NCBI RefSeq assembly: GCF_947568905.1
Contig: NC_079169.1
Span: forward strand, 72,540,001-72,604,000
From: Ostrea edulis
Lineage: Eukaryota
Direction of reading: 5' to 3'
Length of the DNA stretch: 64,000 nt
Shown here: piece by piece, positions 37,387-60,791 of the stretch
Numbering within the stretch: position 1 is the stretch's first letter
Layout of the letters: every line of letters starts with the position of its first letter
The notes under the pieces: model-generated
The model's input: only the letters and a program-made list of their open reading frames with translations
Told to the model about the DNA's origin: nothing
Database searches by the model: none
Made by a program: the position numbers and the translations under genes

Positions 37387-37975
37387 CTAACCAATAATGG
37401 GGAGAGCCGTGTTGTTGGTCAAGGCGGTCAACAGAAGGACCAGAGGAACTAAAACAGAAACATTTCTATCTTACAACTGGTCAAATGATTTAAAGGGAAA
37501 ACAAGAAATTTTTCTCTATCGAATTGAAGACATATAGCTTGTAACAAACTTTAGCAAAAACGATTCTTGAATTAATAACAGGTATCAATATTATCAAAAA
37601 TATTATATTAATTTCAAACATTTTATAAGAACTGTTTTCAACTAAAACGATGGCTGAATAAAAAGACTCACTGTAGTTAACAAAGGATGAGAAGGCGGAT
37701 TGTTTGGCGAGTTTGTTCAGCTGGTTTCTCTGTTGGCGGGTCTGGTACCACTCTTGGAGGTATCTTTGTTGGTAGGCCTGTCTACTAGCATAGTTCCCTT
37801 GTCCTCCATACCCGCCACCAAGTCCTCCATACCCGCCGCCAAGTCCTCCATACCCGCCGCCAAGTCCTCCAAGGGCTGAAGTCTGTGATCCTGGATAATA
37901 ATACAGTCCTTCAACCACGACAACGGCCAGTGCGATCACGCAGGGTAAAACCATCAAGATGACGGACTTATTCAT
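37387..37975 (-). CDS. Uncharacterised secreted Gly/Tyr-rich protein P1 (121 aa, 2 coding exons)
   Basis: Exons 37975-37672 and 37448-37387 (phase 1, GTGAGT...TTTTAG). Protein: MNKSVILMVLPCVIALAVVVVEG-LYYYPGSQTSALGG(LGGGYGG)x3-QGNYASRQAYQQRYLQEWYQTRQQRNQLNKLAKQSAFSSFVNY-IPLVLLLTALTNNTALPIIG*. TATA at 38074-38067; 3'-UTR exon from 37118; AATAAA at 37071-37066. Confidence 0.85.
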
Positions 37976-39289
37976 GCTGCTGGTTAGTGTGAGCTGAAAG
38001 CGAATCCCCGACTTGTGGAATACTCAGGTGATGAGAGGAGATTGGTGATGTGCTGGTTCGTCGAGATATATATACCGATTTTTTTGTCGGTTACGTGAAT
38101 TGCGATTCCGGGTGTTACGTCACGGCTTCACAGGTACGTTAAAGTAGTCTGCGTGAAGTAACGATTGTCGAAATGGGGTAACACTTTTTAGGGAAGAGTT
38201 TCTCTGTAATAGGAGCAACCTGTGTAACTTGTGATACTGACTATTTCTATAGGGTATTTCTATAAACGTGGATACGCTGTATTAGTATAGAAAACGACAC
38301 TTCCTTATCAGTTAAATTACTATTGATTTTTGCTACATAAAAATTCTAATAAAATATATTAAGGTCATCCAAAGTATATAGAGTTTAAATTTTTCGCACA
38401 TTCAGAAATACTGATATGTAATTATATGGACGAATTGGTAAATTAATGTCTCTTCCTCAGAAATTTGAAGTTGACAGTTTGCCCTGGGGAGTGGTTCTAC
38501 AACATTGCAATTTACAATCCCGAGAACATATTTCTGTTGTTCATGAATAATGATAATAATAAAATTTATATAGCGCCTTAAATAAAACAAATTACTCTAA
38601 GACGCTTTACAGGGGTAAGAGGAGGAATGCGACGATCAAACAGAATTAAATGAAATTAAATGACAGTATGACATAAGATCAAATTATCAAAATAAAACAC
38701 TATAATTAAGCTAAAAGGTGTTGGGTATTTTTTAGTGTACGTACTCTGTTGTTTTCCCTGTTCTTCGCTAGAATTAATTTTTTTTTAAAATTCCATCGTG
38801 TCTTTCAAATTAATTTTACAAGCATTTTTGTTGAAAATATTAATCCGTTCTTTGTTTGTTTTTAATTTTTTTTTTTAAAATACGTTAAGAAATTCGTTAT
38901 TCCCAAGTGATTCAGAGTTATGAGATCTTTTTTGTTTACAGTTAAACAATTTTTTTAAAATTAATTTGTTGTATTGAGATATTGTGGACTTCGATACTCA
39001 TTGAGTAATGTATTCATTTAATGTCGACTGATACAAATATATATCCATACATATGTATTACATTACAAATGGCAGACATGTACATGTATAAGCAAAATGA
39101 TCCAGTGATTTAAGATTAAAGCTAGGAAATTGTACGTAGTAAAGAAATATCACTAGGCAGGCTCAGGCAACCTCGTGGTCCAGAGCACAGACCCCTAGGC
39201 TATCCCACATAAGTTGTTTTCCAGCAATATTCTAACTGAATTTAACTTGGTGTACAAAGTATTCAAATCCATACAAAACACAAACGACC

Positions 39290-39535
39290 GGTGGCGGTGG
39301 CCCAGTGGTTGTGGCATTCACCTCGCCACGTGGAGACCCGAGGCTGGCGCCACGTCAAACCTTGGAAATTTAACAGGTTGTTCTTTTGGATATCATCTTA
39401 AACACTGAGATAGACGTTGGCACGATAAAGAATCATCACTGCAACGAACGTAAGCGCAGTGCATGTGTCCGAATTCGTGACACTTTACCTAAAGCTTTTT
39501 GACGTCTGGAACGTAAAACAAAATACTAAGAATAC
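39290..39535 (+). mobile_element. Degenerate tRNA-derived SINE
   Basis: GGTGGCCCAGTGG...CATTCACCTCG head and GTTGGCACGATAAAGA..CAC..C body motif. Confidence 0.55.
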
Positions 39536-39929
39536 AAATTTCGTTGAAAGGATTTTAAAAGGGTTTGGAAAGGTTTATATTTTGTGGCGGAAAGATTGCT
39601 TAATCAAAAAGCTATAACAAATGCTCGATTTTACCGTTTCTTTTTCATCTAATGTATTGTCAATATCTATACTCCTACATGTAGATGTACCCGCGTGTAA
39701 AGATGTTGTTTGTGATTGTCAATTTTCTATACATGTTTACCAATTATCAAAACGTATGGGGTTTTTTTATTTATCGATTTACTCATTTAAAATGGGTTTC
39801 CTTCAGTAATATAATTAAGTGTGCAGTGTGTTATACGTGTATATTGTTTGTTGGTTTTTTGTTTTGTTTGTTTTTGTTTTTGTTTTTTTTACGAAGTTGC
39901 GGCTTGAGTAATAAAGATATCCAATAACA

Positions 39930-40329
39930 ATATTTTCCAGGTGATATGAAGAAAATTTACACAATATAATCTGGTGTGGAGAATTTGATTTAGTTTTGAA
40001 CCCAGCTCTAGATTCTTATAATTATAAACATATAAATAATTCAATGGCTAGAAACAAAATATTAGAAATTATAGAGTCGCATGGTTATGTAGACCCCTTT
40101 AGAGAGATCAATGAAAATCTTCGTAGATAATCATGGCGGAAAAGATCCCCACTTAAACAAAGTAGACTAGATTTTTTTTACTATCTGCATCTTTACTGTC
40201 AAGCTTAAGTACTTGTAATATTGAATCTAGTTACAGATCAGACCACTCTGCAATATCTTTGTCATTAACTTTCAATGAATTAAAAAAAGGAAGGGAGCTA
40301 TGGAAATTCAACAACTCCCTACTTTACGA

Positions 40330-40371
<42 letters not shown>

Positions 40372-43300
40372 TTAGAAATTAAATTACACATGTTAAAAAA
40401 CAATATGCAGTCCCGGTTTACAACATGGATAATTTACACAGACTTCCAGATGATTTTTTTCACTATCAATGATCAGTTATTCCTTGAAACCTTGCTATTT
40501 GAAATAAGAGGTAAAAGTATTTCTTATTCTTCTTAAAGACAAAGAGGAGCAGGGTTTAATGGGGAAAAATAAAAAGTATTGAGGAAAATATTTCTAAAGG
40601 CAATGAAAATGAGTTACATGATAAACAACAAAACTAGAAAAAATTAGAAAGCATAAATTACAAGGAAATTATATAAGAAGCTGAGCTAAATGGGTAGAAG
40701 AAGAGGAGAAATCATCAAGGTATTTTTGTCAACTCGAATCAAGAAATTTTACAAGTAAGATCATTTCAAAGTTGAAAATGGATAGTGGTGATATGATACA
40801 TGATCAGTCACAAATTTTGATTGAAACGAAATCATTTTATGAAAATTTATATAAAAACAATCTAGATAATGCAGATTTAGATATAAATATTGAGCTAGTA
40901 TATGATGATATTCCTAAACTTTCAGAAGGGGAGTCTAAAAGCCTGGAGGGGGAAATTACTTTACCTGAGGCATCAAGGACACTCCTCAATATGAAATCAA
41001 TTAAATCACCAGGATCTGATGGTTTTTCTACTGAGTTTTTCAAAGTCTTTAGGAAACATATTGGTGTGTATGTTCTTAGATCTATTAATTATGGATATAT
41101 AATTAATATGCTGTCCTTCACATAAAGACATGGTGTAATTACACTGTTACCAAAGGGAGATAAACCAAAACACTATTTAAACAACTGGCGACCAATTACA
41201 TTGCTAAATACAGTCTATAAAATTGCATCCGGATCTATTGAAGTTAGATTTATAAAATATTTAGATAAATAATGGACCCAGATCAAACAGGATTCATATC
41301 CAACAGGTATATAGGCGAAAACACTAGATATATGATATAATGCATTATACTGAAGAAGAAGATATTCCCGGTCTTTCATTACGTATTGATGTCGGGATAG
41401 CCTTTGATACTTTATCATGGGATTTTATACAAAAATTTTAAACTTCTTAAAACATTGGTCCTTCCATTAGAACATGGGTTAAACTCGTCTACACAAATAT
41501 AACATCAACAATTGACCAAGGTGTCAACCTATCTGAAGTCTTTGATATTCATAGAGTTTGTAGACAAGGGGATACTTTATCTCCGTATGTTTTTTTATAT
41601 GTACAGAGATTTTGGCAATTAAAATAAGAAATTTAAAAAAATAATAAAGGCATAACTGTTGGTAATGTGGGGAAAAAAATCTCAACTTGCTGATGACACA
41701 TCAATTATTCTTGATGGTAATGAAAAGTCTTTCAGAAACTCTTAAAACTCTACATGCTTTCTCAGAAATGTCTGGACTATGTATGAATTACACAAAAACT
41801 CAAACAGTATGGATTGGCTCAAAAAATACAGTAACGATGTTCTTATTCCCAACAGTAAACCTAATTGGAGTACCATTAAATTCACTTTACTAGGAATACA
41901 TCTTGATGTCGATTTGCAAAATATGCCCAAATTAAATTATGATCCAAAATTAGTAAAAATCAAATATATTCTAAATAATGAGGGAAGAGGTACATGTATT
42001 TAACTCCCATTGGCAAGATAACAGTTATTATAATTCTTTATTGCGAAAGACATACATCTTATAGCATTATAACAAACTTGAACATGGATAATAATTACAA
42101 AGCTGAAAATAAACGGCCAATTCTTACAAAGACATCTAGCATACAATAGTATATAGTAAATACAATTATAGTATAATGATAGTAAAAAAGGAGAATGGCA
42201 TTAAAACATTAGGTCACCATTGTTGAATCATATCCTGATGTCCATTCCTAACCCATCTAATGCCTCTTGTAAAGAATTAGACAAACTATTTTTCTCTTTT
42301 GTGTGGGGTTGTTCAACCCTCAGGGTAAAGAAGGATGTAATTGTCAAGAAATATGAAAATGGCGGTCTAAAAATGATAGATTAAAAATAATTTATAGTTT
42401 CAATGAAATTGTTGTGGGTAAGACATCTTATCTCTACAAATAGGGGGTTGAGTAATTTCAAATCAAAATTTAACGTAAGTAAATTCACATCCTGTGGGAT
42501 TGAATACGCTAATCTATTTTTAAAATAATTAAAAACAAATTTTTGATAAATGTATTCAAGGCTTGGATTGAATTACAGAACACTTGTACAGAGTCTGATG
42601 TTACTGCAGATTCACCTTTGTTTTACAACCCTATGATCCATATTAGTAAGAAAATGTATTTTAATAAACATTTATTCGACAATAATATCAGACACATTAA
42701 TGATATTATTGAGGAAGATGGTACTTTTTCAGTCACGGGACTCTTAGTGCTACTTATCCAAAAGTGAAAATTAACTACTTAGAATATACAAGTATTATTC
42801 ATGCTATAAAAACTTGGATTAAGCAGTCAGGTACAGACACTAACTTTAAAAGGTTACCAAATCTTTTTATCAGAAGAAACATTTAATACAATGTATTGAA
42901 AAGAAAAAAATCAAAGTTCTTTTATGAATTTTTAAAAAGAGATGGATTCAGATTTTAGATATGGATAACAGAGAATGGAAAATTTTCAACATACTACCTT
43001 TCAAAATAACTTAAAACTGCAAACTCCAATGATTTCAATACAAAATAATTAACCGAATTTTAGCAACAAATTCATTTTTATTCAAAATTAAGGTAATTCC
43101 ACCCCTCTAGAATTATAGGTTCAATCTTATATTTGATTGTTGATTCTTCAAATAATATATCTTATTAACAAATAAAAATGATAAAATAAATATGTTTCGG
43201 TATTAATATTTCACAAAAACTGGTTGAAACGATATACAATATGTAATAGTATTCATAACAATTTCATGAAACAGTTTCTTTGAAAAATATACAAAATGTT

Positions 43301-43500
43301 TGTGAGAAATCTATCGCATAATGGATTTGATAAATAATTTAATGAAAACAGAGTCATTGCCCTTAAATTCAATATTTTGTTACATATAATTGATTATTCA
43401 TATATAACTTAGACTTTTGAAATATATGGTTAACAAGATTTTTTACAATAACAATTGAAAAAGACTCCAACAAATGTTATGTTCCTGTCATGCATAAATC
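39930..43500 (+). mobile_element. Decayed L1/Tx1-clade LINE (endonuclease + RT + C-terminus)
   Basis: Broken frames with G(D/E)F.LVLNP.LD, RLDFF, SDHS, WKFNNSLL, KSPGSDGFSTEFFK, NWRPITLLN, RQGD.LSP and LADDT. Confidence 0.85.
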
Positions 43501-45261
43501 TTATTAAATCATTGACTTTGCGAAATCTTGCATAATATCTCAATTTATGAATAAATTTCGCAGGAAAGCATATGCTTACGGAAGAAAGCATTAATTCAGG
43601 AATATATGGAAACAAATATATCTACTGTACACTTTCTAGTTTTATTAAACACCTCAACACAAGTCCGACGATCGGGGCAAGTTTGACACTACCGCGTATT
43701 TATGATCAATTATCAGGGCAACGCTTTGTTTTATTGTCACCTTTATATGACCAATAATTACGTGTTATCTGTGTAAGTTTATGCACATGCTGTCAGTAAA
43801 TAAAACCAATCGTATTCAAAATTAATGTTGTGCACGGGATGTATGTTATATGTATTCCGTAACCATATGCTTTCCTGCGAAATATATTAATGAATTAAGA
43901 TAATATGCAAAAACAAACCTCGACCATCTATATTGCCGCTTCGGTACCCTACACCCCGGTCACAACATACATGTAGCCTATACCCCGCATGTTGGGGTAT
44001 ACTCGGTGGAGTGTTGTTGTTTTTTTCCATAGGTTCAGTAATTCTAATTCTATTTATGAACAATTTCGAGAGCGGGATCTGTCTAATGATTATCTTACAT
44101 ATAGCAACTTAGGGATCACTAAAGCGTTTATTTCTTTGCTTTTTCCTGCTTCTCTGTTGTTGTTTTTGTTGTTGTTGTTTTTTTGGTGGTGGTTTTTTTG
44201 TTTGTTTTTTGGGGTGTTTTATTTTTCAATAGTGAGTACATGTACATAACTATTTTATTTCATATTGTATCATATCTTTTACAATTCTAATATCACTTAT
44301 CATTATAAGGGATAACAGACACTTGGTTTGGTTTGGGATTTGGACCGATGCTGTATGTAGCCCCCCCCCCCCCCCCCCCCCCCCCCCAATAAAATATAGC
44401 TTTCCATCGAAAAACTGGCTGTGTAGTAGTTTACCTCACACGGAAAGCTGGCTATGTAGGTGGGACACCCCCTCCTTATTATAGAAAGATTACTCCCGAT
44501 TAAAACCTGCTATGTAGTTGACTTCCGTTTCTTTCCATTCCAGTTATGTTAATAGCGGGTTGCTCTTTTCAATGATATGCAATGTTTGACAATCTTCATG
44601 CAATGTAATTTTACCATACAATCGGACACATTTAGCATCTAAAATAAAATAATAATTAAGTTTAAATTCAACGTTATTCAGATGAAAATAAGTAAAGCCT
44701 TGTCATTTACAAATTAGCCAATCAGATTCCAACTAAATTCAGAGCGCGTGCGTGTCTCTGTTGGTATCATATGTTGTAGATTTATCATATGATTAACGAA
44801 GTAATCCGATGAAACCAATTAAAACATTTTATGAATTAATATGACGGACAAAACACACTACTTCATGCATAAAATGGTGAAGATAACGACCAGTGACTAA
44901 AGAATACAAAATTAAGAGCAGGACAAGTTTATGTAACATACAGCATCTGTTTTACAAACATCGAAAGCCCAATTCACTTTCCATAAATTTAATGAAAACC
45001 CCATTACGTGTGAAATTCTACAATATAGTAAATCTTCTCCCAGGGAATGGATTTCTTTCTACGTTTTTCTTTTCAATCAGCACCACGGAGCTATGTTGGG
45101 AACGCTACGACGGTTGAAGACAGTACCTATATACCCTTTAACCCTATTCAAGAAGGATGAAATCAAAAGTCGGGCTAGATATTTAGCTATGCCGTTTAAG
45201 GGCATTGCTCCTATAGGTTATTGGTTTTATGTTTGCTAATGTCTTGTATCATTAGGAAAAC

Positions 45262-45746
45262 CATCTTCCCAAGTCAAGGGTTTCTGATCTGCTCCGCTTC
45301 ATATAAACCCTTGACCAAATGGGCAGAGTAAGACGGGTTTGCTAGTGCGCCATCTAGTGACATTACATATTCATGAACTTTAGAGACCTATGCTATTGAC
45401 TGATCAGAAAGCGCGTATCAAACAAGGATAGCGAGACCAAATGGCTACCTAGGAAGTACATGTACATTAGTTTAAGTAATTAAAAAAATTCTTTATTGTC
45501 AACATGACTTGCTATAAGTTCGCAATTAAACAAGTATCAACACTCTGTTTCATATACTTAGTTTCAGCTAAAAATATTCAAATACGAAGTATACACTTAA
45601 CCCCTGACAGCAAAGGGGAGTCACAAAGTTGACAAACTCCATGGTTTTCTGTTTAAGACTAAGTTTCCGGTATAATAAAACAATGTTTCTGATTGGCTCA
45701 TGTGTCTTCTAATGAGGCCAATCAGAGAACTGGATTTCTAACCCGT
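45262..45746. mobile_element. Degenerate MITE related to 6471-6953
   Basis: Begins CATCTTCCCAAGTCAAGGGTT...AACCCTTGAC; inner inverted repeat GCAGAGTAAGACGGGTT / AACCCGTCTTACTCTGC. Confidence 0.5.
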
Positions 45747-46089
45747 CTTACTCTGCTTCTTTACTTCTGTTTTCAGGGGAGAACACTGATATTCTTAGGC
45801 TGTACTTGGCGAAACTTGCGTGTAAAATTAATACCATGGATGCAGTACAAAATGTTTTCGGTTTGTATTAAGTGGGTCATGAAATGGAAACTTAATCAAA
45901 TGTAATTAGTAATGAAGTTATTAGATTTAATCTATTAGACATCCATTATTAATTATTCTGTGTCTGATTTTATAAAGTAAAAATCTCTGCAATATAAAAT
46001 GTCCTTGTCCAAAACTTAACATACAAGATACTTGGGGCCACTGGAGACAAAACAAGTTACATTTAATTCCACGTTTATTATCACATTTC

Positions 46090-46368
46090 TATGTTACGAT
46101 ATACGGTATGAGATTTGTATGGCTTTAGGAATGCTATGTTACGATATACGGTATGAGATTTGTATGGCTTTAGAATGCTGTGTTACGATATACGGTATGA
46201 GATTTGTATTTGTATGGCTTTAGGAATGCTATGTTACGATATACGTATGAGATTTGTATGGCTTTAGGAATGCTATGTTACGATATACGGTATGAGATTT
46301 GTATGGCTTTAGGAATGCTATGTTACGATACACGTATGAGATTTGTATGGCTTTAGGAATGCTATGGT
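46090..46368. repeat. 45-bp minisatellite x~6
   Basis: Unit AATGCTATGTTACGATATACGGTATGAGATTTGTATGGCTTTAGG. Confidence 0.92.
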
Positions 46369-46384
46369 ACTAATACGCATATGC

Positions 46385-46695
46385 TATATTTGTTTGTTTG
46401 TTTGTTTGTTTTACATCACTTCCAGAACACCGGCTGTAAGTGAAGAACCACACATTTAGACCTCTGCTTAGCGTCCAGGGTCGTAGCAGTGAGGGTACTT
46501 TAACGTACGTACACCTGCCGCGACACGAGACCTCCGTTTTAAGGTCATATCCGAAAGACCCGTATCTCTCACCTCTAAATGCCGAGTGTTTGGCGAAGAA
46601 GCAGTCATTACCCATGTTTATATCTTGGGTTTATATCTTGGCACGAGGAGGGTTCGAACTCACAATCTCGAACGCTCTATCACTGTACTACTGCT
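46385..46695 (-). mobile_element. tRNA-derived SINE
   Basis: (GTTT)n tail; body TTTTAAGGTCATATCCGAA; B-box region GGGTTCGAACTC. A Penelope-like tail follows at 46725-46872. Confidence 0.8.
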
Positions 46696-47170
46696 ACCTC
46701 GCTATAACATATCTATGCAATGCTATTACAGCCGGTGTGGGCGGTCGACAGGGAATGCTTACTCCTCCTTGGCACCTGGTATATCCAGTGGTTGGAGATT
46801 GCCCAACTCTCTATTTTGTATTACTTATAGGGAATTATGAGATTTATCCCTGTTTGTTATCTTCACCTTTCACTGAATGATATGGCATGGCACATATATG
46901 TATATCCGTATGACATAGCTTCTAGTTGCAGCTTAAATACTACAAAATAAATAACTATTACAATTATTTGAATGAAAACTGATAATCCCCACAAAGGATA
47001 CAGAATCAATTTATTGTGTGTACATGTACTACTCGAACAATTTTAAACGAAAATGTTTAATGTGGTATAAATTAATCAAGAGTTTACTTAGGTATGAAAT
47101 TTTCCCCGACTGGGTTTTTTAAGCCCGTGAAACATGTTTACGTACATCAACAATTCCCTCTTAGAGGATG

Positions 47171-49085: not shown

Positions 49086-49120
<35 letters not shown>

Positions 49121-49826
49121 ACACACAAAAAAACCCTGTTCAGTCAGCTTAAAATAATTCAAAATGATGGAGCCTTCGGTCATGGTAAAAAGAAAAAAGA
49201 TAACGTATTTTCAATATCTTTTTATAAATTAAGATTGTTGTGAAGCATATTACCGTATATAACAATTTTAACTCGCACTCCCAATATTTCAAATTTGATA
49301 AAACTTCACGAAGGATACAAAATAAGAAGGATGTTTATTCAAATAAAATGACATAGAAATGATATTTCTGCCTATCACGCATCGCAATGTCACCGCCCCT
49401 GAAAATTAGAATAGGAAAAGAAAGTTATAATTACATAAATAATGAAAATTAGAATAGGAAAAAAAAGTTATAGGTACATAAATATTAGTTTTTTTATATA
49501 TACAATAGCTAAAGTACCTTTTATCTGAAAACAGAATGTTTAAAAAATTCGCATTTTTCTTTTTAATTTTCGAGCATTTAAACTGTCCCTTTCTCGTGAT
49601 TACAACATAAGAGCATATCTCTATTAAAACATTACTTGGATTATGGATATTAGCGTAAATTCTTGTTGATAGCATTTTAAATCGTATTTCTGTTTGTTTC
49701 CATTTTTAACTTCCATTTCTAATATCTTTAATATTTTAAAGTAATAAATCATGAATACATTTGTATTTCTAACGTACAAAGTTTGTTTACCAATTGTTAA
49801 CAGAATCGTGGTATTCGATAAAGAGT

Positions 49827-50550
49827 TTATCCAACGAGAGGAATTGACGTGGAGTTGGAGAACGCCAGCAAGGTAAGGATCCCCGGCACTGAAAGGCAAA
49901 TAAATTGTTATGTGTTAAGTATTATGAAAATGAAGAGTCATCCCAATTAATATATTTCTGAAAAGAAATGACCATATAACAAAACACTATACCCTAATGC
50001 ATTATAAGTACTGCTTTTATTTTAAGTTTGATTATAAACATCAAACAACAAAAAATTAAGTCTAACATTTTGATGGAAATGGAATAAGTCTAGCACTTGT
50101 AGTAATATTTTGAATTTTAATTATTATAGTGAATGCTTATGGATAATAATACCTGTAATACATAATCATATTTTGTTCTGCAGTTGCATTCTAGATTAAT
50201 ATAATTCATTGAACGTGTTGAAGGGAGGGGCACATAAAGAGGAAAAAATAATTCATACCCAAGGCACTCCATTTGGTGAAAGTTGATGCCCGGGCCAGAT
50301 CATTGAGGGCGTTTCTAATGACAATGGTCCTGGACGCTTTTCGCTGCCAATCTCTCAATGCCATTCTGTAAGCTATAACATTCCGCTGATATTTCTGTCT
50401 CTCTGCGGAGTTAGCCCCGTATACACCTCCCGCCATACCCGGGTAAGCCCCGTGCATTCTATACCCTCCCATATTATACTGGGCGCTCACTTCCACTGCC
50501 ACGTAAGCCAGCAGGCAGACTCCGGCTATGAAGAAAAATTGTTTATTCAT
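49827..50550 (-). CDS. Uncharacterised secreted Gly/Tyr/Met-rich protein P2 (117 aa, 2 coding exons)
   Basis: Exons 50550-50259 and 49888-49827 (phase 1). Protein: MNKQFFFIAGVCLLAYVAVEVSA-QYNMGGYRMHGAYPGMAGGVYGANSAERQKYQRNVIAYRMALRDWQRKASRTIVIRNALNDLARASTFTKWSAL-VPGILTLLAFSNSTSIPLVG*. TATATAAA at 50633-50626; UTR exon from 49398; AATAAA at 49339-49334. Confidence 0.85.
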
Positions 50551-51493: not shown

Positions 51494-52370
51494 ATGAATA
51501 AAGCTATTTTATTCATCGTCGGGACGCTGTTGGCAGTCGTTATAGTGGTCCATGTAAGCCATCTTCATACCATCCCGGATCATCTAATATATCTGTGATA
51601 TTTTATGGAAAATGAATATATGAAAAGTTTAATTTTCTAAATTTTAAGGTGACTAGATATTCTGCCAGAGGGTAAAACTCGACTATATTCTTAATTACTG
51701 TATATTCATTTTTATTTCTTTGGTATAAAAAAAGGAAGAAAAATATCCATTATTATTTATTGTTATATTAAAACAAAGTAATTTGAACGCAATTAATGAA
51801 AAACAACAATATTCTGATTTAGTGCCAGCGAGTGATGGTGATCAGACCTCAGGCCAGAAGATCAAACTTGGGTGCTTACAACATGTACAACCAAATGGCC
51901 AGCGCCCGTCAACCTTCGTTCTCCCAGCAAGATGGATATCTGTATGCCCTTGGCATCAACCAACAATACACGGAGGCCAATGAAGCACAGAATCTTCTAA
52001 GGACCGTACAAGCCATCAGGCAGGCAACCTATGACTCCAGAATGGGATCACTGCTTAACCTTTGTAAGTGACCTTCCTAAAAAAAAATGTTAAACGTTAT
52101 TTAAAGAAACTAAGAACTAAATATGAACTAAAAGTAGGTTTAACTTTTTTCTTACTGTCAGTTAACTATTGAAATAGGCCTATATGATTATTTATCTGAT
52201 TTCTTGGCAAAGTACGAAGTTTGAAATAGAAATAGTATTGGAAATAAGTTGATGAAAACTATTTTTGAAACGAATTTTACATCCATCAACAAATTTGGTT
52301 TTTCTTTGCAGTGTTTACTCTCGCCATCAGTTTATTGGCCACGAACTCCACTGGTGCTGTAGCCGGTTAA
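51494..52370 (+). CDS. Uncharacterised secreted Gln/Tyr-rich protein P3 (119 aa, 3 coding exons)
   Basis: Exons 51494-51553, 51823-52063 and 52312-52370. Protein: MNKAILFIVGTLLAVVIVVHC-QRVMVIRPQARRSNLGAYNMYNQMASARQPSFSQQDGYLYALGINQQYTEANEAQNLLRTVQAIRQATYDSRMGSLLNL-LFTLAISLLATNSTGAVAG*. UTR exon from 52528; AATAAA at 52578-52583. Confidence 0.85.
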
Positions 52371-52824
52371 ATCATATGAATGAGGCTTCAAGATCTATTC
52401 TCTTATTTGGTAATATACCTTTAAACATAGTATATAGAGCCTATTCCATCCTTGTGTTTTAAGAACTTGTGGACTTTTTAGACTTTAGACTTCTACATAA
52501 GATTCTTTAATACATTTTCTATTTTAGGGATGGGCGACCACAGACATTGCGTGATGTTAACTATATGCGTTTCCTTCAATAAAATCATGTACACTTTTTG
52601 TTTACTTTCTATTCTGTATATATTAATGGAATGGCATACATGTATAATGTGATATGCGTCGAATAAAAGAATTGCGACCTTTTGTTCATAGTTGAATTTG
52701 TTAATGTAATGGCCAGGTATCATCTTATATAGAACAACTACCAGAGCTACTATGAATATCAGTTATGAAACGTTTACTATGTTTGAGAAGAAACTTTGTC
52801 GATTCAATGAAGAAATGAGTTTCA

Positions 52825-52935
52825 TTTTTTAAAAACACATGAGGGTATGACCTGCGACGCCTCACGCTGACACACTATACGAAAAGTCCGCCGACGTGAA
52901 GACTTGCAGTTCATACCCTCATGTATTTTTAAAAC
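52825..52935. mobile_element. Short palindromic MITE-like element
   Basis: Arms TTTTAAAAACACATGAGGGTATGA / TCATACCCTCATGTATTTTTAAAA. Confidence 0.65.
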
Positions 52936-53221
52936 TGAAGTTTATCTCTTTTATTTACATTTCTGTCGGAACTCTCAGCCGTTAAAATAGGCGTACTATA
53001 TTTATTAAAATCCATGCGCGCATTGTTCACAACGTCAACACATTCATGAAGAAATGGCTATCTTCACAATTCATAGACGGAAACATTGGAAATGTGCACA
53101 TAGTTCTATGTAAAACTTTTGACGAGAAAACGTTTCAATTGATAAAATAGATAAGAAATAAATAGAGGGAAATTACAAGGTTTCGATGCTGAAACATGTC
53201 CTTTCGAGGTGTATTGCAGGC

Positions 53222-53336
53222 TAGCTGCAGAACTGTAGCTCTCAGAAAAAATATTGTGACGGACTGAGAAAAGGGGTGGATCTGTAGCTCTCTGTCCGTC
53301 ACAATATTTTTTCAGAGAGCTACAGTTCTGCAGCTA
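53222..53336. mobile_element. 115-bp foldback MITE with perfect 9-bp TSD
   Basis: ~43-bp arms TAGCTGCAGAACTGTAGCTCTC...; ATTGCAGGC at 53213-53221 and 53337-53345. Confidence 0.9.
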
Positions 53337-54546
53337 ATTGCAGGCATGCTTCTCAATGATGGATTGTCCTAAAGAAGACAAATAAAGAATAGAATTTTAA
53401 GGTCAGGCTGGGATTTCTCGAAAAAATCTCAAACTTAAGTTTTGGTTTTCATTTATTTGAGCAATCAAAATTTTAGTATAATCTCAGACTTAAATCCAAG
53501 TTTCGACTTCAGTTTCTTTCGAGAAATCCAGGCCAAAAATGATATAGAAAAATAAATCAATACTTAGGTATGCAGAATTTAGAAAATGTTCTTCAGGTGG
53601 ATGTTTGATAGAGCGCGACCAAATCGAGCCCCGGTTCTTATGGCCGTATACTTACACGAACTCTTCCAGGACTACCAAACTATGCCCATCCGTCATCCTC
53701 GGGCAAGGTCACGTAACGACCATCTGAACCATTGAAATGACTAGTAAATCAACCAATGAGATTCGCGGGTTTGGCTATATAAAGTTACGTCAGTTTCCTT
53801 GTGACTGCTGGAACGTCATCGGTTTACTAATACACATCACATGGTTACAGAATATTTCATTGCGGGGTCATTAAGATCAGTGGACGTCTTTTCTCCATTA
53901 ATTACTCAACTCAATAGGTTATAAAGGCTTTTTAAGGCATGCCCCCTAACGGATTAATGATCAAACTACTGATGTTTTCAAATTTCTACATTAGTACATA
54001 CATGTACATGTATATCCTTTGATCTTATGATATTTTATCAACTGTCAAGTAAGGAGTGAAAATCTTTTAATTCTGATCTATGGATAAAAATGTTGGAATA
54101 TGTTTAAAATGAAGAAAACGAAATGTTAAAGCCGAATTTTCAATGTGAACTTTAATATAATTTTGCGAAATCATGTACAATTTCTCAGTAATGAAATATT
54201 TAATTTAATTTTCTAATGTACCGGTCATCAATTTACACGGAGAAAATAATCTGCATGTCAAAATTAGAGCATGTTTCAGGGTACTTAGAGTTATTTCGTT
54301 GTGTAAAGCTGTTTTAGCCATTTTGAAAATATATAGCAATACAGAGTACAGAGAAATATAAACTGGTTAACATTTGTACACATAGATCATGCCTGTACAG
54401 AGTACTACATGTGTACAGCTTCTCAACCTAACATACATGTAACTTTATATATAAATGCTTACATCGTACATAATGAAAACACACCGTCATTGATCAACAG
54501 GTCATTTGACATGAAATTTACAATGTGATTGTACACATGTCCTTAA

Positions 54547-56093
54547 AGGACACATCGCATGTTTTTAAACTTTTTAATTTTTTCAGCAAAATTAATTCAT
54601 TTCATGCCTAAAACTACTTTACATGTGTTTTAAAAGAAACAGTTTGCGTAGTTTTCGAGTTTGAAAGCGATGAAATTCAAATCTTGCGATATGCATATTT
54701 TCTTCGATATTTTACGCGCCATAATCTGTGACGTCATATGCGACCTCGAGCGAGAAGATTTGAAAACAGTTGTTAGCCATTTCATTAACAGATTAGATTT
54801 AATTGACAAACAAACAATTATCACATTAACGGCTTGTAAATAACACTGCATTAGGGTGTTTTGTGCCGTTTAAGGGTGTACATGCTGTCAGTAGAGAGGC
54901 TTTGGACTGTGTTTTTTTTCAATTTTCGAAGGAAGGTACGAGGGACAAGACGTGAATATTTTTTGTCGGCACAACGACTTTGCCATAAAAAACCCAGTAG
55001 AATTTGTCCCTGTACTTTTTTAAACAAGCACTTGGACAAAGACGTAGATAAACTGCGAGAAAATGGTTCTATCAAAGCTACCCACTGTTACATATAGGCC
55101 TACGGCTTATGCTTTCCGTTCTGCTCTCAAATTCAATACACACACGCACCAACTGACCTTCACCTTGTAACACCATAGAGGCAGAACTTCGCTAGCAGTG
55201 TCTACCAACTGGTAGTTTTAAAAAAGAAATTTGAAGATAAAAGATAATTGAACTTTCAATTATAAATAATAAAATATGATATTTCCCAACTTTGAATTGA
55301 ATTATAATGCTTTCATTTTTTTTTTTTTTAAGGAACACGTACGTGTTTACAACAACGTACAGCACGCCGCGCCCCCACTTCCTAAGTAACAACGTGTAGA
55401 TAACAAAAAAATAATGATTAATAAAATTGCTTGAATAAAATAATCTAAAAGTATTGGGATTTTCACCATAAATTTGATAATTTTTATTATTATTTTTTCT
55501 CTCGAAATGCACCCGTGATAGTAGGCCTAGTTGTCAATGATACATAATCGTATCATAATTTAGATCTAACTTCTCCAAAATAAATTTAATAATAATTGCA
55601 CTGTTTATTTTCAAAAAGCAACAACGCTAATTACAGTTCTTTACAGAAATGACATTACCATATTGTGTTTAGACAGTGATCCCATGTAAACATTATTTAC
55701 TCGCAGATTTCATACTCGCTTTCCTCGCTACATTTGGGTCGCTATTTGTATGCACTGGTGGCTAAAAGATATAAGACTCGGGAAATTTGTTAACATCGAA
55801 ATAAATGTTATCCATGGTAAATTTATTAGGCCCCTAAAACCCGAGTTTTTAAAAATATCTAACACTACTTTTACAACAAGTTGATCGACGAAGGTCGCAT
55901 ATGACGTCACTGTACCACGTGACTACCTATCTAATTAACTAGGCTTTTTGAAATCGGGGCTTAGATTTAAGTCCGTATTGTGGCTAATTATCGCAATACT
56001 TCAGCGAACGAACTATTACAATTAATTTCTATAAGCATAAGGAAGACAAAATGCATATAATTTTGTATACTTTGAAAACACGATATGTGTCCT
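54547..56093. mobile_element. Non-autonomous DNA transposon with TTAA TSD (Kolobok-like)
   Basis: TTAA-AGGACACATC... / ...ATATGTGTCCT-TTAA; subterminal inverted GACGTCATATGCGACCT / AGGTCGCATATGACGTC. Confidence 0.7.
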
Positions 56094-56196
56094 TTAATGC
56101 TGACAAGGTCCTCTCCCTACACTATATTGAACAAAAATATAAGTGTATATAAAAACACACAACGAGATCAATAGCGGACTTATATAATTATCAGAA

Positions 56197-56375
56197 NNNN
56201 NNNNNNNNNNNNNNNNNNNNNNNNNNNNNNNNNNNNNNNNNNNNNNNNNNNNNNNNNNNNNNNNNNNNNNNNNNNNNNNNNNNNNNNNNNNNNNNNNNNN
56301 NNNNNNNNNNNNNNNNNNNNNNNNNNNNNNNNNNNNNNNNNNNNNNNNNNNNNNNNNNNNNNNNNNNNNNNNNNN
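56197..56375. other. Assembly gap (179 N)
   Basis: Run of N. Confidence 1.
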
Positions 56376-57030
56376 ACTCAACATCCAAAGTGTCGGATCT
56401 AATAGTAGATACGAGGTCAAATAAAAAAGGATATAAAAAGCACTAAAAATGACCAACGACACGAACAACAGTGAATTGTTAAATTTTCAGGACAACCTGT
56501 CCCTCCCTCAGGACAATAGAATATTTACATAGAAAAGAAAACTAAATAGAAAAGGAAACTAAAACTACAACTAAACTACAAAAGCTGATAACAAACAAAA
56601 CGTCTACATATTAAAATTATTGAGTGCAATGTGTGGCAATAGAAAAGTTTGTTCCCATCGAGCGTCAAGACAGATCTGAACCGACTTGTCCTACGCTGGA
56701 TCAAGTTAAAAAAAACAGGAATTTTCAGAACAAACTGTCCCTTCTATCTATCTACACAAATGTATCTGCCTATCTATCTAGCTACTTAGCACTATAATCC
56801 AACAACACTCAACATCCAAAGTGTCGGATCTAATAGTAGATACGAGGCAAATAAAAAAGGATATAAAAAGCACTAAAAATGACCAACGGCACGAACAAGT
56901 GAATTGTCAAATTTTCAGGACAACCTGTCCCTTCCTCAGGACGATAGAATATTTACATAGAAAAGAAAACTAAAACTAAATAGAAAAGGAAACTAAAACT
57001 ACAACTAAACTACAAAAGCTGGTAACAAAC
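56376..57030 (-). mobile_element. Tandem 431-bp repeat (1.5 visible units) with hammerhead-like motif
   Basis: ACTCAACATCCAAAGTGTCGGATCT at 56376 and 56807; same family as 16915-17190. Confidence 0.65.
56903..56945 (-). ncRNA. Candidate minimal type I hammerhead ribozyme
   Basis: ATCGTC-CTGAGGA-A-GGGAC-AGGTT-GTCCT-GAA-AATT-T-GACAAT contains the full core CUGANGA/GAAA/UH, a 5-bp stem II, stem I GTC:GAC and a palindromic stem III. Confidence 0.5.
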
Positions 57031-58173
57031 AACCTTATATTACCTTTAACAGGTAACAGGCATCTATAATGTTGACTGGAATATTGGATTAGCAGCCACA
57101 TGAGCCAGACTTATCCTGAATCTGACTAGCACAGGGTCCAGAGGATTAAACTAAAGCAAAGGACACAAATACTATTACCGACGTTTTGTCAGTAGTAAAT
57201 CTTGGATGTTTTATTCTTCATAATTCTCCATGTATACTGCAACATGAAAATAACATTTTGATTTAACATAAAACCGTATTTTGAAAACTAAGAAAATAAA
57301 AGGAATGAAATGTCTGGATTTGGTTTGTTTTTTGGTTTTTTTTTTTTTGGTTGTTTTTTTGTTGATAATGTTGTTGGTTTTTTTTCGTGGAATGGCCCTC
57401 GTATTTCTTTCCGCATTTGATTAAGAAAGTGTAATGAGTTTCTGCAACCTTTCACCCAGAGATTTCTTTATAAGAACATGTAAATCATTTATTATAGTGA
57501 CAGGTGCATTTTACATACTACATAATTTGATACAATATACGGTAATTAAACTGTTGCACCCGGCCCATTTGACCCACAAGTCACTTTTATACATTATTTC
57601 AGTTTAAATACGTACACACGTCGTGCATATTAAATTAATTGTGCAAATGTCGTTTTCTTACTTGAGATGATACAGTAAGAAATTGTGCAGTTTGTCTTTT
57701 ATTATTTACCATTAAAATGTTTAGATTGATATTTACTTCTACATTTATAGTTCGAAAGAATGTTTCTCAATGGTTTTCGAAAATTTTGCAATATAACAGA
57801 AAATGTTTTTTATCCTCTGTGAATCCATCATGACATAAAGTAGAAAAACGTTCATGTGGAGGTTTATTTACGTAACGAACGAGGGCGAGGATTCCACGTC
57901 TGAACTGAACCATCCCGGACCTTTCTTGTTACGTATGGTTCGAGTTAGAAATTGTGTGAAGGTGTTCGCAATTTGGGTACAGGCGATATTTTTTGTCTCC
58001 AATGTTCTTCACAAAATCTTTTCACTTTCACTTGATTTATATCACAAAGACGTATATAGTTGTAATGAGAGCACATGTCTAATTTAATTAAATAGGATTT
58101 CTTTCATTTGTAAACACCATGTACCGTTGTTCCGATAGCTCCATGAAAAGACTTTTTGGTAAGAAGTTCGTTG

Positions 58174-58626
58174 CAATCTCTCACCAGAGGGCGTTACGCT
58201 ACGCTCCACAACACCTCTGTTATCGTCTAATTTACAAGAATTTTGTAAAACAGATCGTCTTTGAAAATAAAATAAATCTGCATCATTTTCATAAATAAAA
58301 CATACATTGATGAGTTAAAAACACATTGGTAGGTATCGAAACGCTGTATTACGTTAGTGCAACCTCCATATCTATGGAACTATTTTGTCTTGTCAAATGT
58401 ATTATTTCACTTTCACTTCGTAACTATGGACTCTACATTTAAAAAAAACTAGAGAGATTATAATGATGAAAACCTGACATTGCACAAAGAACAGAAACAT
58501 GCCTTTCTGTTGGAGTCAAAGACGTCATTTTGTCCGTGCGAGATCATGTGGTTAGCCGAACTATTTATCAGACGATAACAGAGGTGAAAGTGAAGCTTGC
58601 GTAGCGCGCCCTCTGGTGAAAGAATG
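58174..58626. mobile_element. Mutator-like MITE, same family as 30983-33748
   Basis: CAATCTCTCACCAGAGGGCG... / ...CGCCCTCTGGTGAAAGAATG; 10-bp TSD AAGTTCGTTG / AAGTTCGTCG. Confidence 0.8.
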
Positions 58627-59209
58627 AAGTTCGTCGTCCATTTGGATTCCATTTTCTCACCAGTCAGTTCCGCTGTGTCGGTGTTAACCGTCCTACTTCA
58701 CTGTTTGAGATGATAACTGGAGCATATATAGGTGTAATCAATCCAACGACACCATGTTGTACAGTTTCTAACGGTTGATATGTTTTAAATCTCCACACCC
58801 CTGTACAATAAAATAAAACATGAATACAAGATTGGACAAGTTTTTCAAAAGTTTGGAATCCGACATCTATATAACTATGAATTTTTTATCTCGAAGTTCT
58901 GTCAACATATTTACCGAGAGTTTCCGCTGCTATAATTGAATTCATCTTTCGTTAAATATAACACCGAGATAGCGACTTACATATTGTAGCTCTTCTTCTC
59001 CAATTTTGAATTTATAATAACTTAGAGGGATGTTGTGTTTCCTGAAATGCATTACGTTTGATTTAATATAATTCATACTTAATCCCCACCGTTTACACCA
59101 ATTAAAAAGGATCACTGTTCGTTATCTTCACCTTTCATACCAAGGGAATTTTATATATCAACCTCATTTTCACTGAGAATAGCAATATCGTTGGCATTTG
59201 ATAAAATGT

Positions 59210-59545
59210 TCATTTTTTCCATCTTCAATATTAACACCCGCATTTAGCTGTGAAATTTCTGTCGTGAAGTCGTTGATAAAGACAGAGAACAGTGTGGGTG
59301 ATAAGTTGTCACCTTAACGTACGCCATTTGAGCACTGAAACCAATTCGTACGAAGATCGTTGACTCAGACACAGAAAATTGTTTAAGAATATAAGCTAGA
59401 AATAGCGTTATATATATATATATATATATAGTACCATTGATTCCAATTAGTTGTAGTTTGTTTTGTAGTAAATCTCTATTGACGAAATCAAAAGCTTTTT
59501 GAAGGTCAATGAAAGTTACTAGACAACTAAACAAATGCAAAACTG
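59210..59545 (-). mobile_element. LINE reverse-transcriptase fragment
   Basis: Minus strand FIDLQKAFDFVNR and GVR*GDNLSPTLFSVFIND motifs, disrupted. Confidence 0.75.
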
Positions 59546-60150
59546 TAAAACATGCAAAATGCTTTAGATTAATTTTTAACTGCCAAGAGAGTTGTTTGTT
59601 TTTCTTTTCAATAAGAACTACAATGAAATACGATAGATATCTCATAGATAATATATAATATATAAATAATATCTTTGAATCATAATATTAAAACAATTTC
59701 AGATTTAATTAATTGGGCAATCAATAGAATTAAAAAAAAACAATTAGTTTTAAAATGAAAATGAGATAAACAAAAATGGTTCAAACATTATATTTCTTAA
59801 CTTTTACCTTTATAACGCGCTTTAATTATATAAGGTGTTATGTGAATTTTTTTTTTTTTTTACAATTATTTTTTGAAGCGCAGAGCTACCTACATGAAAT
59901 TGATTAACTAATCAAACTATCTTCCTTATACTTCCACAGATAATGTTTTAATTTACAAATTTATTCATCATATAACTATCAGGGAAGTATTAGGCTTCTT
60001 GTTTTCACATGCCTAGCGGCTTCCACACAAACACACCTGCATGCTCACTCTACGTAATTCCTTTTTGCAGCCGAGTATACGGGTAAGAAACCAATATATT
60101 ACGACACATGGAAGCAGACGCACTTTTCATACACCTTTCTATATTGCAGA

Positions 60151-60226
60151 TTACGTCAAACTGCCGTCTGCTGTAGGAGGGTGGGAGAGTATAAAAGCAG
60201 ACTAAACCATCGAAGATTCGTCACTT
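60151..60226 (+). promoter_or_regulatory. Core promoter of P4
   Basis: TTACGTCA (CRE/ATF-like) at 60151-60158, TATAAAAG at 60190-60197 and Inr-like TCACTT at 60221-60226. Confidence 0.7.
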
Positions 60227-60256
60227 GCTCGGTCCAGTCGCCAATCACACACAACC

Positions 60257-60791
60257 ATGAACAAGGCAGTCATTCTCCTCGGCACCTCTTGCCTTCTTGC
60301 CATCGCCATCATGCAGGTGTCCGCTTATTACTATGGCAACTCGATGATGTACGGTGGTGCGGGATATCCTTTATCCATGGCCGGTGGTGCTGGAGGTCTT
60401 GGTGGTGCAGGAGGTCTCGGTGCTCGTAGTAATTACTATGACAACTACTACAGACAGTACGATCGCTACAACCGTGCCCAGGCTACCAGAACTATTGCCA
60501 GATCCATCAATGGTCTCCAAACATCCGCCCTCCTCAGTCTGTGTAAGTTAACATTACTCCTGGACACTTCCAATCGTGTCTTCCCGATATGATGAAATAT
60601 TTAATTTTGAAAGAACATTGATTTAGAGTTTAGGTTATTAATCTTATGTTCTTGTTAATTGGTTTGTCAGATAAATAAGCCAAACATATGTACGATTTTT
60701 TGTTTTAAAGATAAGCTTTCTTTATTTTTCAGTTTCTCTGTTCGGTCTCGCCATGCTTGCCACCAACACCACTGGTACTCTTGCTGGTTAA
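60257..60791 (+). CDS. Uncharacterised secreted Gly/Tyr-rich protein P4 (114 aa, 2 coding exons)
   Basis: Exons 60257-60542 and 60733-60791 (phase 1). Protein: MNKAVILLGTSCLLAIAIMQVSA-YYYGNSMMYGGAGYPLSMAGGAGGLGGAGGLGARSNYYDNYYRQYDRYNRAQATRTIARSINGLQTSALLSL-FSLFGLAMLATNTTGTLAG*. UTR intron 60830-60943; AATAAA at 61007-61012. Confidence 0.88.

What the first reader, a model, noticed from the sequence alone, without database searches (positions are those of the whole stretch)
37387..60791. Invariant C-terminal signature: hydrophobic run, N-x-T sequon, then Gly-stop
The tails are IPLVLLLTALT-NNT-ALPIIG*, VPGILTLLAFS-NST-SIPLVG*, LFTLAISLLAT-NST-GAVAG* and FSLFGLAMLAT-NTT-GTLAG*. All four keep N-x-T 4-5 residues before a terminal Gly. 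A C-terminal Gly is the substrate of peptidylglycine alpha-amidating monooxygenase, and N-x-T is an N-glycosylation sequon (established). Keeping both implies the tail enters the secretory lumen, so the hydrophobic run may be a re-entrant, lipid-binding or self-assembly segment rather than a simple anchor. The tail could also be a processing or recognition motif (inference).
Basis: partly seen in the sequence, partly recalled or inferred. Interest (0 to 1): 0.75.

Follow-up and report, generated by a model that had tools for sequence, protein, structure and literature searches.

The report
Conserved tail of bivalve secreted proteins
Four neighbouring small genes of the flat oyster encode secreted Gly/Tyr-rich proteins, and apart from the Met-Asn-Lys start their only residues unchanged from oysters to mussels and scallops are an Asn-x-Thr site and the final Gly of a short hydrophobic tail, so the tail is a real and strongly selected signal whose chemistry (probably a sugar on the Asn, perhaps an amide at the end) still has to be shown at the bench.

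Summary

**What is there**
- The window is Ostrea edulis.
- The four tails are the ends of four paralogous genes of about 115-121 aa.
- Each gene has an MNK start with a signal peptide, a Gly/Tyr-rich disordered stretch, a Q/R-rich helix, a phase-1 intron, and then a short exon coding the tail.
- The assembly gap at 56197-56375 is intergenic and touches none of the genes.

**Conservation**
- A profile search of 1.84 billion protein representatives found only 18 relatives. Every relative whose source is on record is a pteriomorph bivalve: oysters, pearl oyster, mussels, scallop.
- Every member whose last coding exon could be read keeps [S/T]-N-x-T (never N-x-S, never Pro) and ends in Gly-stop.
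- In the 13-sequence alignment the only invariant columns are M1, N2, K3 and these N, T and G.
- Codons differ freely (34 synonymous against 8 replacement differences in the tail), so selection acts on the protein.

**Interpretation**
- The hydrophobic run is short (mostly 12 residues), marginal for a membrane span, and is followed by no charge in most members. This fits a tail that reaches the lumen, where N-x-T could be glycosylated and the Gly amidated.
- Nothing here proves either modification.
- A membrane helix with an Asn/Thr/Gly packing motif remains a serious rival. A GPI signal is unlikely.
- No described family matches.

The parts
37672..37975 (-). gene 1, coding exon 1: MNK start, signal peptide, GGYGG repeats, Q/R-rich helix. 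The spliced protein is identical to Ostrea edulis XP_048730235.1.
37342..37448 (-). gene 1, tail exon: split codon I, then PLVLLLTALT-NNT-ALPIIG, stop at 37389..37387, 45 nt of 3'UTR, then a GTGCGT donor.
50259..50550 (-). gene 2, coding exon 1 (signal peptide, Gly/Tyr stretch, R-rich helix).
   Evidence: the splice to the tail exon is seen in the contig of run X1
49791..49888 (-). gene 2, tail exon: VPGILTLLAFS-NST-SIPLVG, stop at 49829..49827, 36 nt of 3'UTR, then a donor. A 3'UTR intron runs to about 49398.
51494..51553 (+). gene 3, exon 1: MNK start and signal peptide.
   Evidence: same protein N-terminus in C. virginica and Saccostrea models
51823..52063 (+). gene 3, exon 2: body. The acceptor at 51823 was chosen by agreement with the orthologue models and was not seen in reads.
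52312..52409 (+). gene 3, tail exon: split codon L, then FTLAISLLAT-NST-GAVAG, stop at 52368..52370, 39 nt of 3'UTR, then a GTAATA donor.
60257..60542 (+). gene 4, coding exon 1 (signal peptide, Gly/Tyr stretch, helix).
60733..60829 (+). gene 4, tail exon: split codon F, then SLFGLAMLAT-NTT-GTLAG, stop at 60789..60791, 38 nt of 3'UTR, then a GTATGT donor.
56197..56375 (.). assembly gap. It is intergenic between genes 3 and 4 and is not part of the feature.

Best explanation
Shown: the four tails are the C-termini of a tandem cluster of four paralogous genes of an undescribed family of small Cys-free proteins, mostly cationic. As far as the searches reach, the family is restricted to pteriomorph bivalves. 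Each protein has a signal peptide with a typical small-residue cleavage site (VSA|, VEG|, VHC|Q, VMA|Q), a disordered Gly/Tyr-rich stretch, and one long predicted helix. The tail sits on its own short exon. It consists of a hydrophobic run of 12-20 residues (12 in most members), then [S/T]-N-x-T, then 4-9 small or hydrophobic residues, then Gly and stop. The N, T and terminal G are under strong purifying selection at the protein level. Inferred, as the most likely mechanism: after signal-peptide cleavage the whole chain, tail included, reaches the ER lumen, because the run is too short and too weakly hydrophobic, and lacks the usual positive charges on the far side, to stop transfer. The single conserved N-x-T is then glycosylated after translocation, which is the route known for sites in the last 50 residues and one that strongly prefers NXT. 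The glycan would keep the adjacent hydrophobic run soluble, and that run would serve self-association or peripheral membrane or matrix binding. The Gly that directly precedes the stop is then available to peptidylglycine alpha-amidating monooxygenase, which would remove the terminal negative charge. I hold that last step with less confidence than the glycosylation.
For: Gene models and the phase-1 intron shared by all four genes come. A spliced contig confirms gene 2. RefSeq models of O. edulis, Saccostrea and C. virginica give the same spliced ends. The only invariant columns are M1, N2, N, T and the terminal G in 10 oyster proteins, and M1, N2, K3, N, T, G in 13 proteins from oysters, Pinctada, Mytilus and Mizuhopecten. 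The tail shows 34 synonymous against 8 replacement codon differences, while the hydrophobic run shows 44 against 32. The sequon is always N-x-T with x = N, S, T, A or R, never Pro and never N-x-S, and it is the only sequon of the mature protein in nearly all members. The hydrophobic run is mostly 12 residues. Hessa 19-residue sums are +1.4 to +5.9 and the maximum Kyte-Doolittle 19-residue mean is 1.3-1.9. Most members have no K/R/D/E after the run, and K/R lie before it; the exceptions are one Arg in Pinctada (inside the sequon) and one in C. virginica g1 (just after it). Extreme C-terminal sites are glycosylated post-translocationally with a preference for NXT (PMC3613688). From established knowledge, a Gly directly before the stop in a signal-peptide protein is a classical amidation signal, and the penultimate residues here (I, V, A, T, L) are neutral.
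Against: There is no direct evidence of a glycan or an amide. No expression or tissue data exist for O. edulis, and only one spliced contig was found. If the run does sit in the membrane, the Asn is 1-2 residues from it. That is far less than the 12-14 residues the oligosaccharyltransferase needs (Nilsson and von Heijne 1993, from memory), so anchoring and glycosylation cannot both hold at the same time. Gene groups 3 and 4 have more hydrophobic runs (15-residue sums down to -1.8) that might well integrate. Their tails read G-x-x-x-G, a helix-packing motif. AF2 confidence is low (pLDDT 53). Amidating enzymes normally act on peptides in dense-core granules, and nothing shows that these 80-100 residue proteins go there.
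Confidence: 0.4

Rival explanations
1. Single-pass type I membrane protein, or a two-helix hairpin if the signal peptide is not cut. The membrane helix would run to the very C-terminus. The invariant Asn, Thr and Gly would be an in-membrane packing or oligomerisation motif (polar Asn plus small residues, G-x-x-x-G in groups 3 and 4 and in scallop). The sequon would then be unused because it faces the cytosolic leaflet.
For: From the conserved LN[YL] to the end there are 22-24 residues in oysters and scallop, enough for one span. AF2 draws one continuous helix from residue 61 to 114 that runs through the hydrophobic stretch. GAVAG, GTLAG, GTIAG and GSITG are G-x-x-x-G. The 15-residue Hessa sums of groups 3 and 4 are negative. 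The Atlas structure search and a UniRef label point to a SecG-like two-helix shape.
Against: Groups 1 and 2, Pinctada and Mytilus have 19-residue sums of +3.3 to +5.9. Mytilus has an Asp inside the run and a 13-residue polar tail. Pinctada has an Arg inside the sequon and C. virginica g1 has an Arg directly after it, while the other members have no positive residue after the run and K/R before it, which is against the positive-inside rule. G-x-x-x-G is absent from groups 1 and 2, Pinctada and Mytilus, yet N, T and the last G are still invariant. From memory, a cytosolic C-terminal Gly is a degron class in animals (Koren 2018; Lin 2018), so it would be odd to conserve one there.
Confidence: 0.3
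2. The tail is a sequence-specific recognition or processing signal for an unknown partner, such as a sorting receptor, a protease or a transpeptidase. The match to the N-glycosylation sequon and to the amidation signal would then be incidental.
For: The last 8-9 residues are more conserved than the hydrophobic run. The residue before Asn is always S or T, and the one after Thr is small in nearly all members (Arg in C. virginica g1). Neither is needed for glycosylation. The tail has its own exon in oysters, scallop and mussel.
Against: No known eukaryotic C-terminal signal has this form. N-x-T with a free x that is never Pro, and never N-x-S, is exactly what the glycosylation rule predicts. 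The spacing to the end changes from 4-5 to 8-9 residues in Mytilus, which a tight binding site would not tolerate easily.
Confidence: 0.17
3. The hydrophobic C-terminus is a GPI-attachment signal that is cut off and replaced by a lipid anchor.
For: The proteins have an N-terminal signal peptide plus a weakly hydrophobic, mostly uncharged C-terminus with no cytosolic domain, which is the general layout of GPI proproteins.
Against: No conserved omega site exists. Groups 3 and 4 have no small/any/small triplet 8-12 residues before the run (by eye). GPI signals are conserved only in physico-chemical character, whereas here three residues inside the supposedly discarded peptide are invariant. In Mytilus 13 polar residues follow the run. 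I could not run a GPI predictor.
Confidence: 0.07
4. Chance resemblance, or an artefact of reading short ORFs in non-coding DNA.
For: The tails are only 19-20 codons long and lie in AT-rich DNA.
Against: Four hits against 0.09 expected. All four are linked to signal-peptide exons by consensus splice sites. A spliced contig confirms gene 2. Orthologues occur in eight genera.
Confidence: 0.01

Closest known systems
Extreme C-terminal N-glycosylation sites handled by the STT3B oligosaccharyltransferase (e.g. the last N-G-T of human SHBG; PMC3613688)
   Same: The sequon lies within the last 8-13 residues of a signal-peptide protein and is always of the efficient N-x-T type.
   Different: Here the sequon directly follows a hydrophobic run and is the only invariant feature of a whole family. 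Occupancy is unproven.
Amidated secretory peptide precursors (substrates of peptidylglycine alpha-amidating monooxygenase), including Gly-rich antimicrobial peptides of arthropods and nematodes
   Same: A signal peptide, a Gly/Tyr-rich cationic Cys-free mature part, and a Gly as the last encoded residue after a neutral residue.
   Different: The mature chains are 60-100 residues long with a hydrophobic end. There are no dibasic processing sites, and there is no sequence homology to any such family.
GPI-anchored proproteins
   Same: A signal peptide plus a weakly hydrophobic, mostly uncharged C-terminus.
   Different: No omega site, and invariant residues inside the segment that would be discarded.
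Small single-span membrane proteins that associate through polar or G-x-x-x-G motifs (e.g. glycophorin A type packing)
   Same: Asn, Thr and Gly lie in or next to a hydrophobic helix. G-x-x-x-G occurs in two of the four oyster gene groups and in scallop.
   Different: The run is mostly 12 residues, there are no flanking cytosolic charges in most members, and the motif is absent in half of the family.
Database labels: insect 'adult-specific cuticular protein ACP-20' (NCBI name of gene 1), SecG (UniRef name of a scallop member), mussel foot protein 3 (weak Pfam hit)
   Same: Gly/Tyr-rich composition, or two hydrophobic ends around a Gly-rich middle.
   Different: No chitin-binding domain. No SecG hit. 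Mfp-3 scores 15.8 bits, under its 22-bit cut-off, in 1 of 13 members. These labels reflect composition, not homology.

Membership tests
N-glycoprotein with an extreme C-terminal acceptor site | N-x-T/S with x not Pro, and no Pro after T | tested here: met
   Every member read has N-x-T. x is N, S, T, A or R, and the next residue is A, S, G or R.
N-glycoprotein with an extreme C-terminal acceptor site | The site is exposed in the ER lumen, at least 12-14 residues from any membrane-embedded segment | tested here: inconclusive
   A signal peptide is present and the run is marginal for a membrane span. If the run is embedded, the Asn is only 1-2 residues away from it.
N-glycoprotein with an extreme C-terminal acceptor site | A glycan is actually attached | not testable with these tools
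   Needs PNGase F or Endo H treatment, or glycoproteomics.
Amidated secretory peptide or protein (PAM substrate) | Signal peptide, and a Gly as the last residue exposed at the C-terminus | tested here: met
   Gly-stop is present in every member and the Gly codon varies (GGT, GGA, GGG).
Amidated secretory peptide or protein (PAM substrate) | Passage through PAM-containing secretory granules, and a C-terminal amide | not testable with these tools
   Needs mass spectrometry (58 Da lighter than the Gly-extended form).
GPI-anchored protein | Omega site (small residues at omega and omega+2) followed by a spacer and a hydrophobic end | tested here: not met
   No conserved candidate exists, and groups 3 and 4 have none. 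This was inspection only; no predictor was run.
Type I single-span membrane protein | A hydrophobic segment of about 19-21 residues with a favourable insertion energy | tested here: inconclusive
   19-residue Hessa sums are +1.4 to +5.9. 15-residue sums fall as low as -1.8 in groups 3 and 4.
Type I single-span membrane protein | Positive residues on the cytosolic flank | tested here: not met
   There is no K/R after the run, except one Arg in Pinctada (inside the sequon) and one in C. virginica g1 (after it).
Insect cuticular protein ACP-20 (NCBI label) | Chitin-binding (Rebers-Riddiford) domain | tested here: not met
   No Pfam hit at E up to 1.
SecG (UniRef label for a scallop member) | Match to the SecG profile | tested here: not met
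   No SecG hit in 13 members. The only pointer is a TM-score of 0.38 in the Atlas structure list.

The most novel reading that the evidence does not exclude
The tail exon is a bivalve-specific, exon-encoded C-terminal cassette that is doubly modified: an N-glycan on the Asn and an alpha-amide in place of the Gly. This would turn a short hydrophobic peptide into an uncharged, glycan-capped end that anchors or assembles Gly/Tyr-rich proteins on a membrane or extracellular matrix. No other animal lineage has been described with this kind of C-terminal attachment or assembly signal.
Probability: 0.2. Interest if true: 0.65.

Novelty: new variant of a known kind. Interest (0 to 1): 0.47.

Why it matters
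Bivalve genomes hold many lineage-restricted secreted proteins of unknown role. Here the only residues kept between oysters, pearl oysters, mussels and scallops (a very old split) point at two specific, easily assayed modifications on a 20-residue tail. That gives a direct bench handle on an orphan family. If both modifications are real, it would add a new type of C-terminal signal next to GPI signals and tail anchors. The work also corrects several misleading database names and gene models.

Tried and rejected
- **Family and structure searches.** Pfam on exon translations and on 13 members gave nothing above cut-off. A PDB profile search gave no hit. The ESM Atlas gave only sub-0.9 feature hits and TM-scores below 0.5.
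- **Structure prediction.** AF2 with a 10-sequence alignment reached pLDDT 53, too poor for a fold search, so none was run.
- **Literature.** Searches by accession, by tail peptide strings and by topic found no described family. The only hit is a mention of the C. virginica gene 3 orthologue as differentially expressed in gonad.
- **Amphipathic helix.** The hydrophobic moment of the body is no higher than in shuffles.
- **Alternative donor.** I considered that the Gly-stop might really be a 5' splice site (GGT|TAAG). I rejected this because gene 2 reads GGA TAA and the real donor lies 36-45 nt further on.
- **Apparent loss of the tail.** M. gigas A0A8W8NFD3 seems to lack the tail. This is a gene-model artefact, because the Magallana-type contig has an intact tail exon.
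- **RNA evidence.** No listed run is on record as RNA for either stretch; only the spliced contig of X1, laid, gave RNA-type evidence.
- **Earlier scan notes.** A word search of earlier findings returned nothing.
Full report
**1. The observation**

Each sits on a very short exon behind a pyrimidine-rich acceptor. Upstream of each lies an exon that starts with MNK and a hydrophobic signal sequence.

Enumerating GT..AG pairs that keep the frame gives one clearly best model per gene, with donors GTGAGT, GTATGA, GTAAGT and GTAAGT:
- Genes 1, 2 and 4 have two coding exons. Gene 3 has three.
- In all four genes the intron before the tail is phase 1 and falls at the same place in the protein.

A spliced contig in public run X1 joins 49888 to 50259 with GT..AG on the minus strand. 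This is exactly the gene 2 model. The spliced gene 1 protein is letter for letter the RefSeq protein XP_048730235.1 of Ostrea edulis, so the window is from the European flat oyster.

A six-frame scan of the window for the motif finds only these four, against 0.09 expected from shuffles.

**2. The gap**

The N run at 56197-56375 lies between gene 3 (stop at 52370) and gene 4 (ATG at 60257). It sits in AT-rich DNA with short repeats and no coding signal. No exon or intron of the four genes spans it. I did not try to fill it. A fifth family member hidden in a gap of the estimated size (179 letters) is not possible for a gene of at least 530 bases, but the size is only an estimate.

**3. What the genes are**

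The products are 114-121 aa long and have this layout:
- a signal peptide with a classical small-residue cleavage site;
- a Gly/Tyr-rich stretch that AF2 leaves disordered;
- one long predicted helix rich in Q, R, N and Y;
- the hydrophobic run and the tail.

The mature parts have no Cys and a net charge of +1 to +9.

Pfam, the PDB and the ESM Atlas give nothing. The NCBI name 'adult-specific cuticular protein ACP-20-like' and a UniRef 'SecG' label on a scallop member have no profile support and reflect composition only.

**4. Relatives**

- Word-based searches found orthologues of all four genes in Saccostrea echinata, S. cucullata, Crassostrea virginica and Magallana.
- A profile search of 1.84 billion representatives returned only 18 proteins. 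Every one with a recorded source is from a bivalve of the Pteriomorphia. The new ones include Pinctada imbricata, Mytilus edulis and M. galloprovincialis, and Mizuhopecten yessoensis.
- A third search with a wider alignment added no new named taxon.
- The order and orientation g1(-) g2(-) g3(+) g4(+) is kept in C. virginica within about 10 kb. The order g2, g3, g4 is kept in S. echinata.
- In O. edulis the cluster is spread over 23 kb by retroelement debris.
- Scallop and mussel genes have the same phase-1 intron before the tail.

**5. Conservation of the tail**

- In 10 oyster proteins the only invariant columns are M1, N2, the Asn and Thr of the sequon, and the last Gly.
- In 13 proteins spanning oysters, pearl oyster, mussel and scallop the invariant columns are M1, N2, K3, N, T and G.
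- Every member whose last coding exon could be read keeps N-x-T and Gly-stop.
- Proteins that seem to lack the tail are ORF calls that read into the intron (for example P0001, P0006, P0013).
- In the case of M. gigas A0A8W8NFD3, the gene model jumps over the stop. The Magallana-type contig L006 has an intact tail exon ending NTTGNLAG.
- The middle residue of the sequon is N, S, T, A or R and never Pro. The third is always T and never S.
- The residue before Asn is always S or T, and the one after Thr is small in nearly all members (Arg in C. virginica g1).
- Between T and the final G there are 4-5 residues in oysters, scallop and pearl oyster, and 8-9 in Mytilus.
- Among O. edulis, S. echinata and C. 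virginica the tail (from Asn on) has 34 synonymous and 8 replacement codon differences. The hydrophobic run has 44 and 32.
- The Thr codon is ACG, ACC, ACA or ACT, and the Gly codon is GGT, GGA or GGG. Selection therefore acts on the amino acids and not on a DNA or RNA signal.
- The tail sequon is the only sequon in the mature protein of nearly all members, although they hold 4-9 Asn each.

**6. Where does the tail sit?**

- The stretch without charged or amide residues before the sequon is 12 residues in most members, 15 in group 2 and 18-20 in group 4. In Mytilus an Asp interrupts the run.
- Summed Hessa insertion energies over 19 residues are +1.4 to +5.9 kcal/mol. The best Kyte-Doolittle 19-residue means are 1.3-1.9, around the usual 1.6 threshold.
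- No K or R follows the run, apart from one Arg in Pinctada (inside the sequon) and one in C. virginica g1 (just after it). K and R precede the run.

A short, marginal segment with this charge pattern at the very end of a chain is a poor stop-transfer signal. I therefore infer that the tail most likely follows the rest of the protein into the lumen.

There the sequon would be modified after translocation. Published work shows that sites in the last 50-55 residues are handled this way, and that NXT is used much more efficiently than NXS there (PMC3613688). That fits the exclusive use of Thr.

From established knowledge, a Gly directly before the stop in a secretory protein is an amidation signal, and the penultimate residues here are all neutral. 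It rests on inference only.

**7. Rivals**

*Membrane helix with a packing motif.* A membrane helix reaching to the C-terminus, with Asn, Thr and Gly as a packing motif, explains the invariance equally well for groups 3 and 4 and for scallop. Their tails are G-x-x-x-G and their runs are more hydrophobic. It fits badly for groups 1 and 2, Pinctada and Mytilus.

*Anchoring and glycosylation together.* If the run is embedded, the Asn is only 1-2 residues from the membrane, too close for the oligosaccharyltransferase (the 12-14 residue rule, from memory). Anchoring and glycosylation therefore exclude each other at the moment of modification.

*GPI signal.* This is unlikely. There is no conserved omega site, and the invariant residues lie in the part that would be thrown away.

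*Unknown partner.* A specific recognition motif for an unknown partner cannot be excluded.

*Amphipathic lipid-binding helix.* The body shows no sign of one beyond shuffles.

**8. Comparison with what is known, and novelty**

I found no paper that describes the family or the motif. The only mention is the C. virginica gene 3 orthologue LOC111118638 among genes differentially expressed in gonad (PMC12040131).

The parts of the proposed mechanism are all known kinds: C-terminal N-x-T glycosylation, Gly-directed amidation, and short hydrophobic ends. Their fixed combination on a separate exon, as the sole invariant feature of a lineage-restricted family, is new as far as I can tell. I class it as a new variant of known kinds and give it moderate interest.

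**9. Verdict**

Noticed in passing
window 37340-37389, 49789-49829, 52368-52411, 60789-60831; also L001, L002, L003, L004, L005: In all four genes the stop codon lies in the penultimate exon. A consensus 5' splice site follows 36-45 nt after the stop. For gene 2 the spliced contig of run X1 leaves at 49790 and resumes near 49397. A matching consensus donor is found by pattern scan in Saccostrea and C. virginica (about +35 to +43), scallop (+47) and Mytilus (+5). The distance is under the roughly 50 nt that usually triggers nonsense-mediated decay.
   Followed up: partly
window 37387-60791 compared with L005 5059-15143 and L004 8353-18057: The order and orientation of the four-gene cluster is conserved among oyster genera. 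The cluster occupies about 10 kb in C. virginica and 23 kb in O. edulis, where reverse-transcriptase-like ORFs (40772-41125 +, 59244-59645 -) lie between the genes.
   Followed up: partly
P0004 (M. gigas A0A8W8NFD3), L006 1180-1290: The UniProt model of the M. gigas gene 4 orthologue has a foreign C-terminus because it skips the stop and reads the 3'UTR in another frame. The genomic contig has an intact tail exon. Many Logan and ENA ORF calls of the family likewise read into the intron.
   Followed up: yes
P0007, P0041: The database names 'adult-specific cuticular protein ACP-20-like' (O. edulis gene 1) and 'Protein-export membrane protein SecG' (a scallop member in UniRef) have no profile support and appear to be artefacts of composition or shape.
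   Followed up: yes
Tandem Repeats Finder on 54500-58500 reported only short 15-23 bp repeats there, which may be because fewer than two copies are present. I did not examine it further.
   Followed up: no
P0028, P0032, P0033 (Saccostrea; Magallana- or Crassostrea-type contigs): A fifth paralogue group, closest to gene 4, with the tail ...FSFIATNSTGTIAG, exists on another contig in S. cucullata. O. edulis may carry it outside this window.
   Followed up: no
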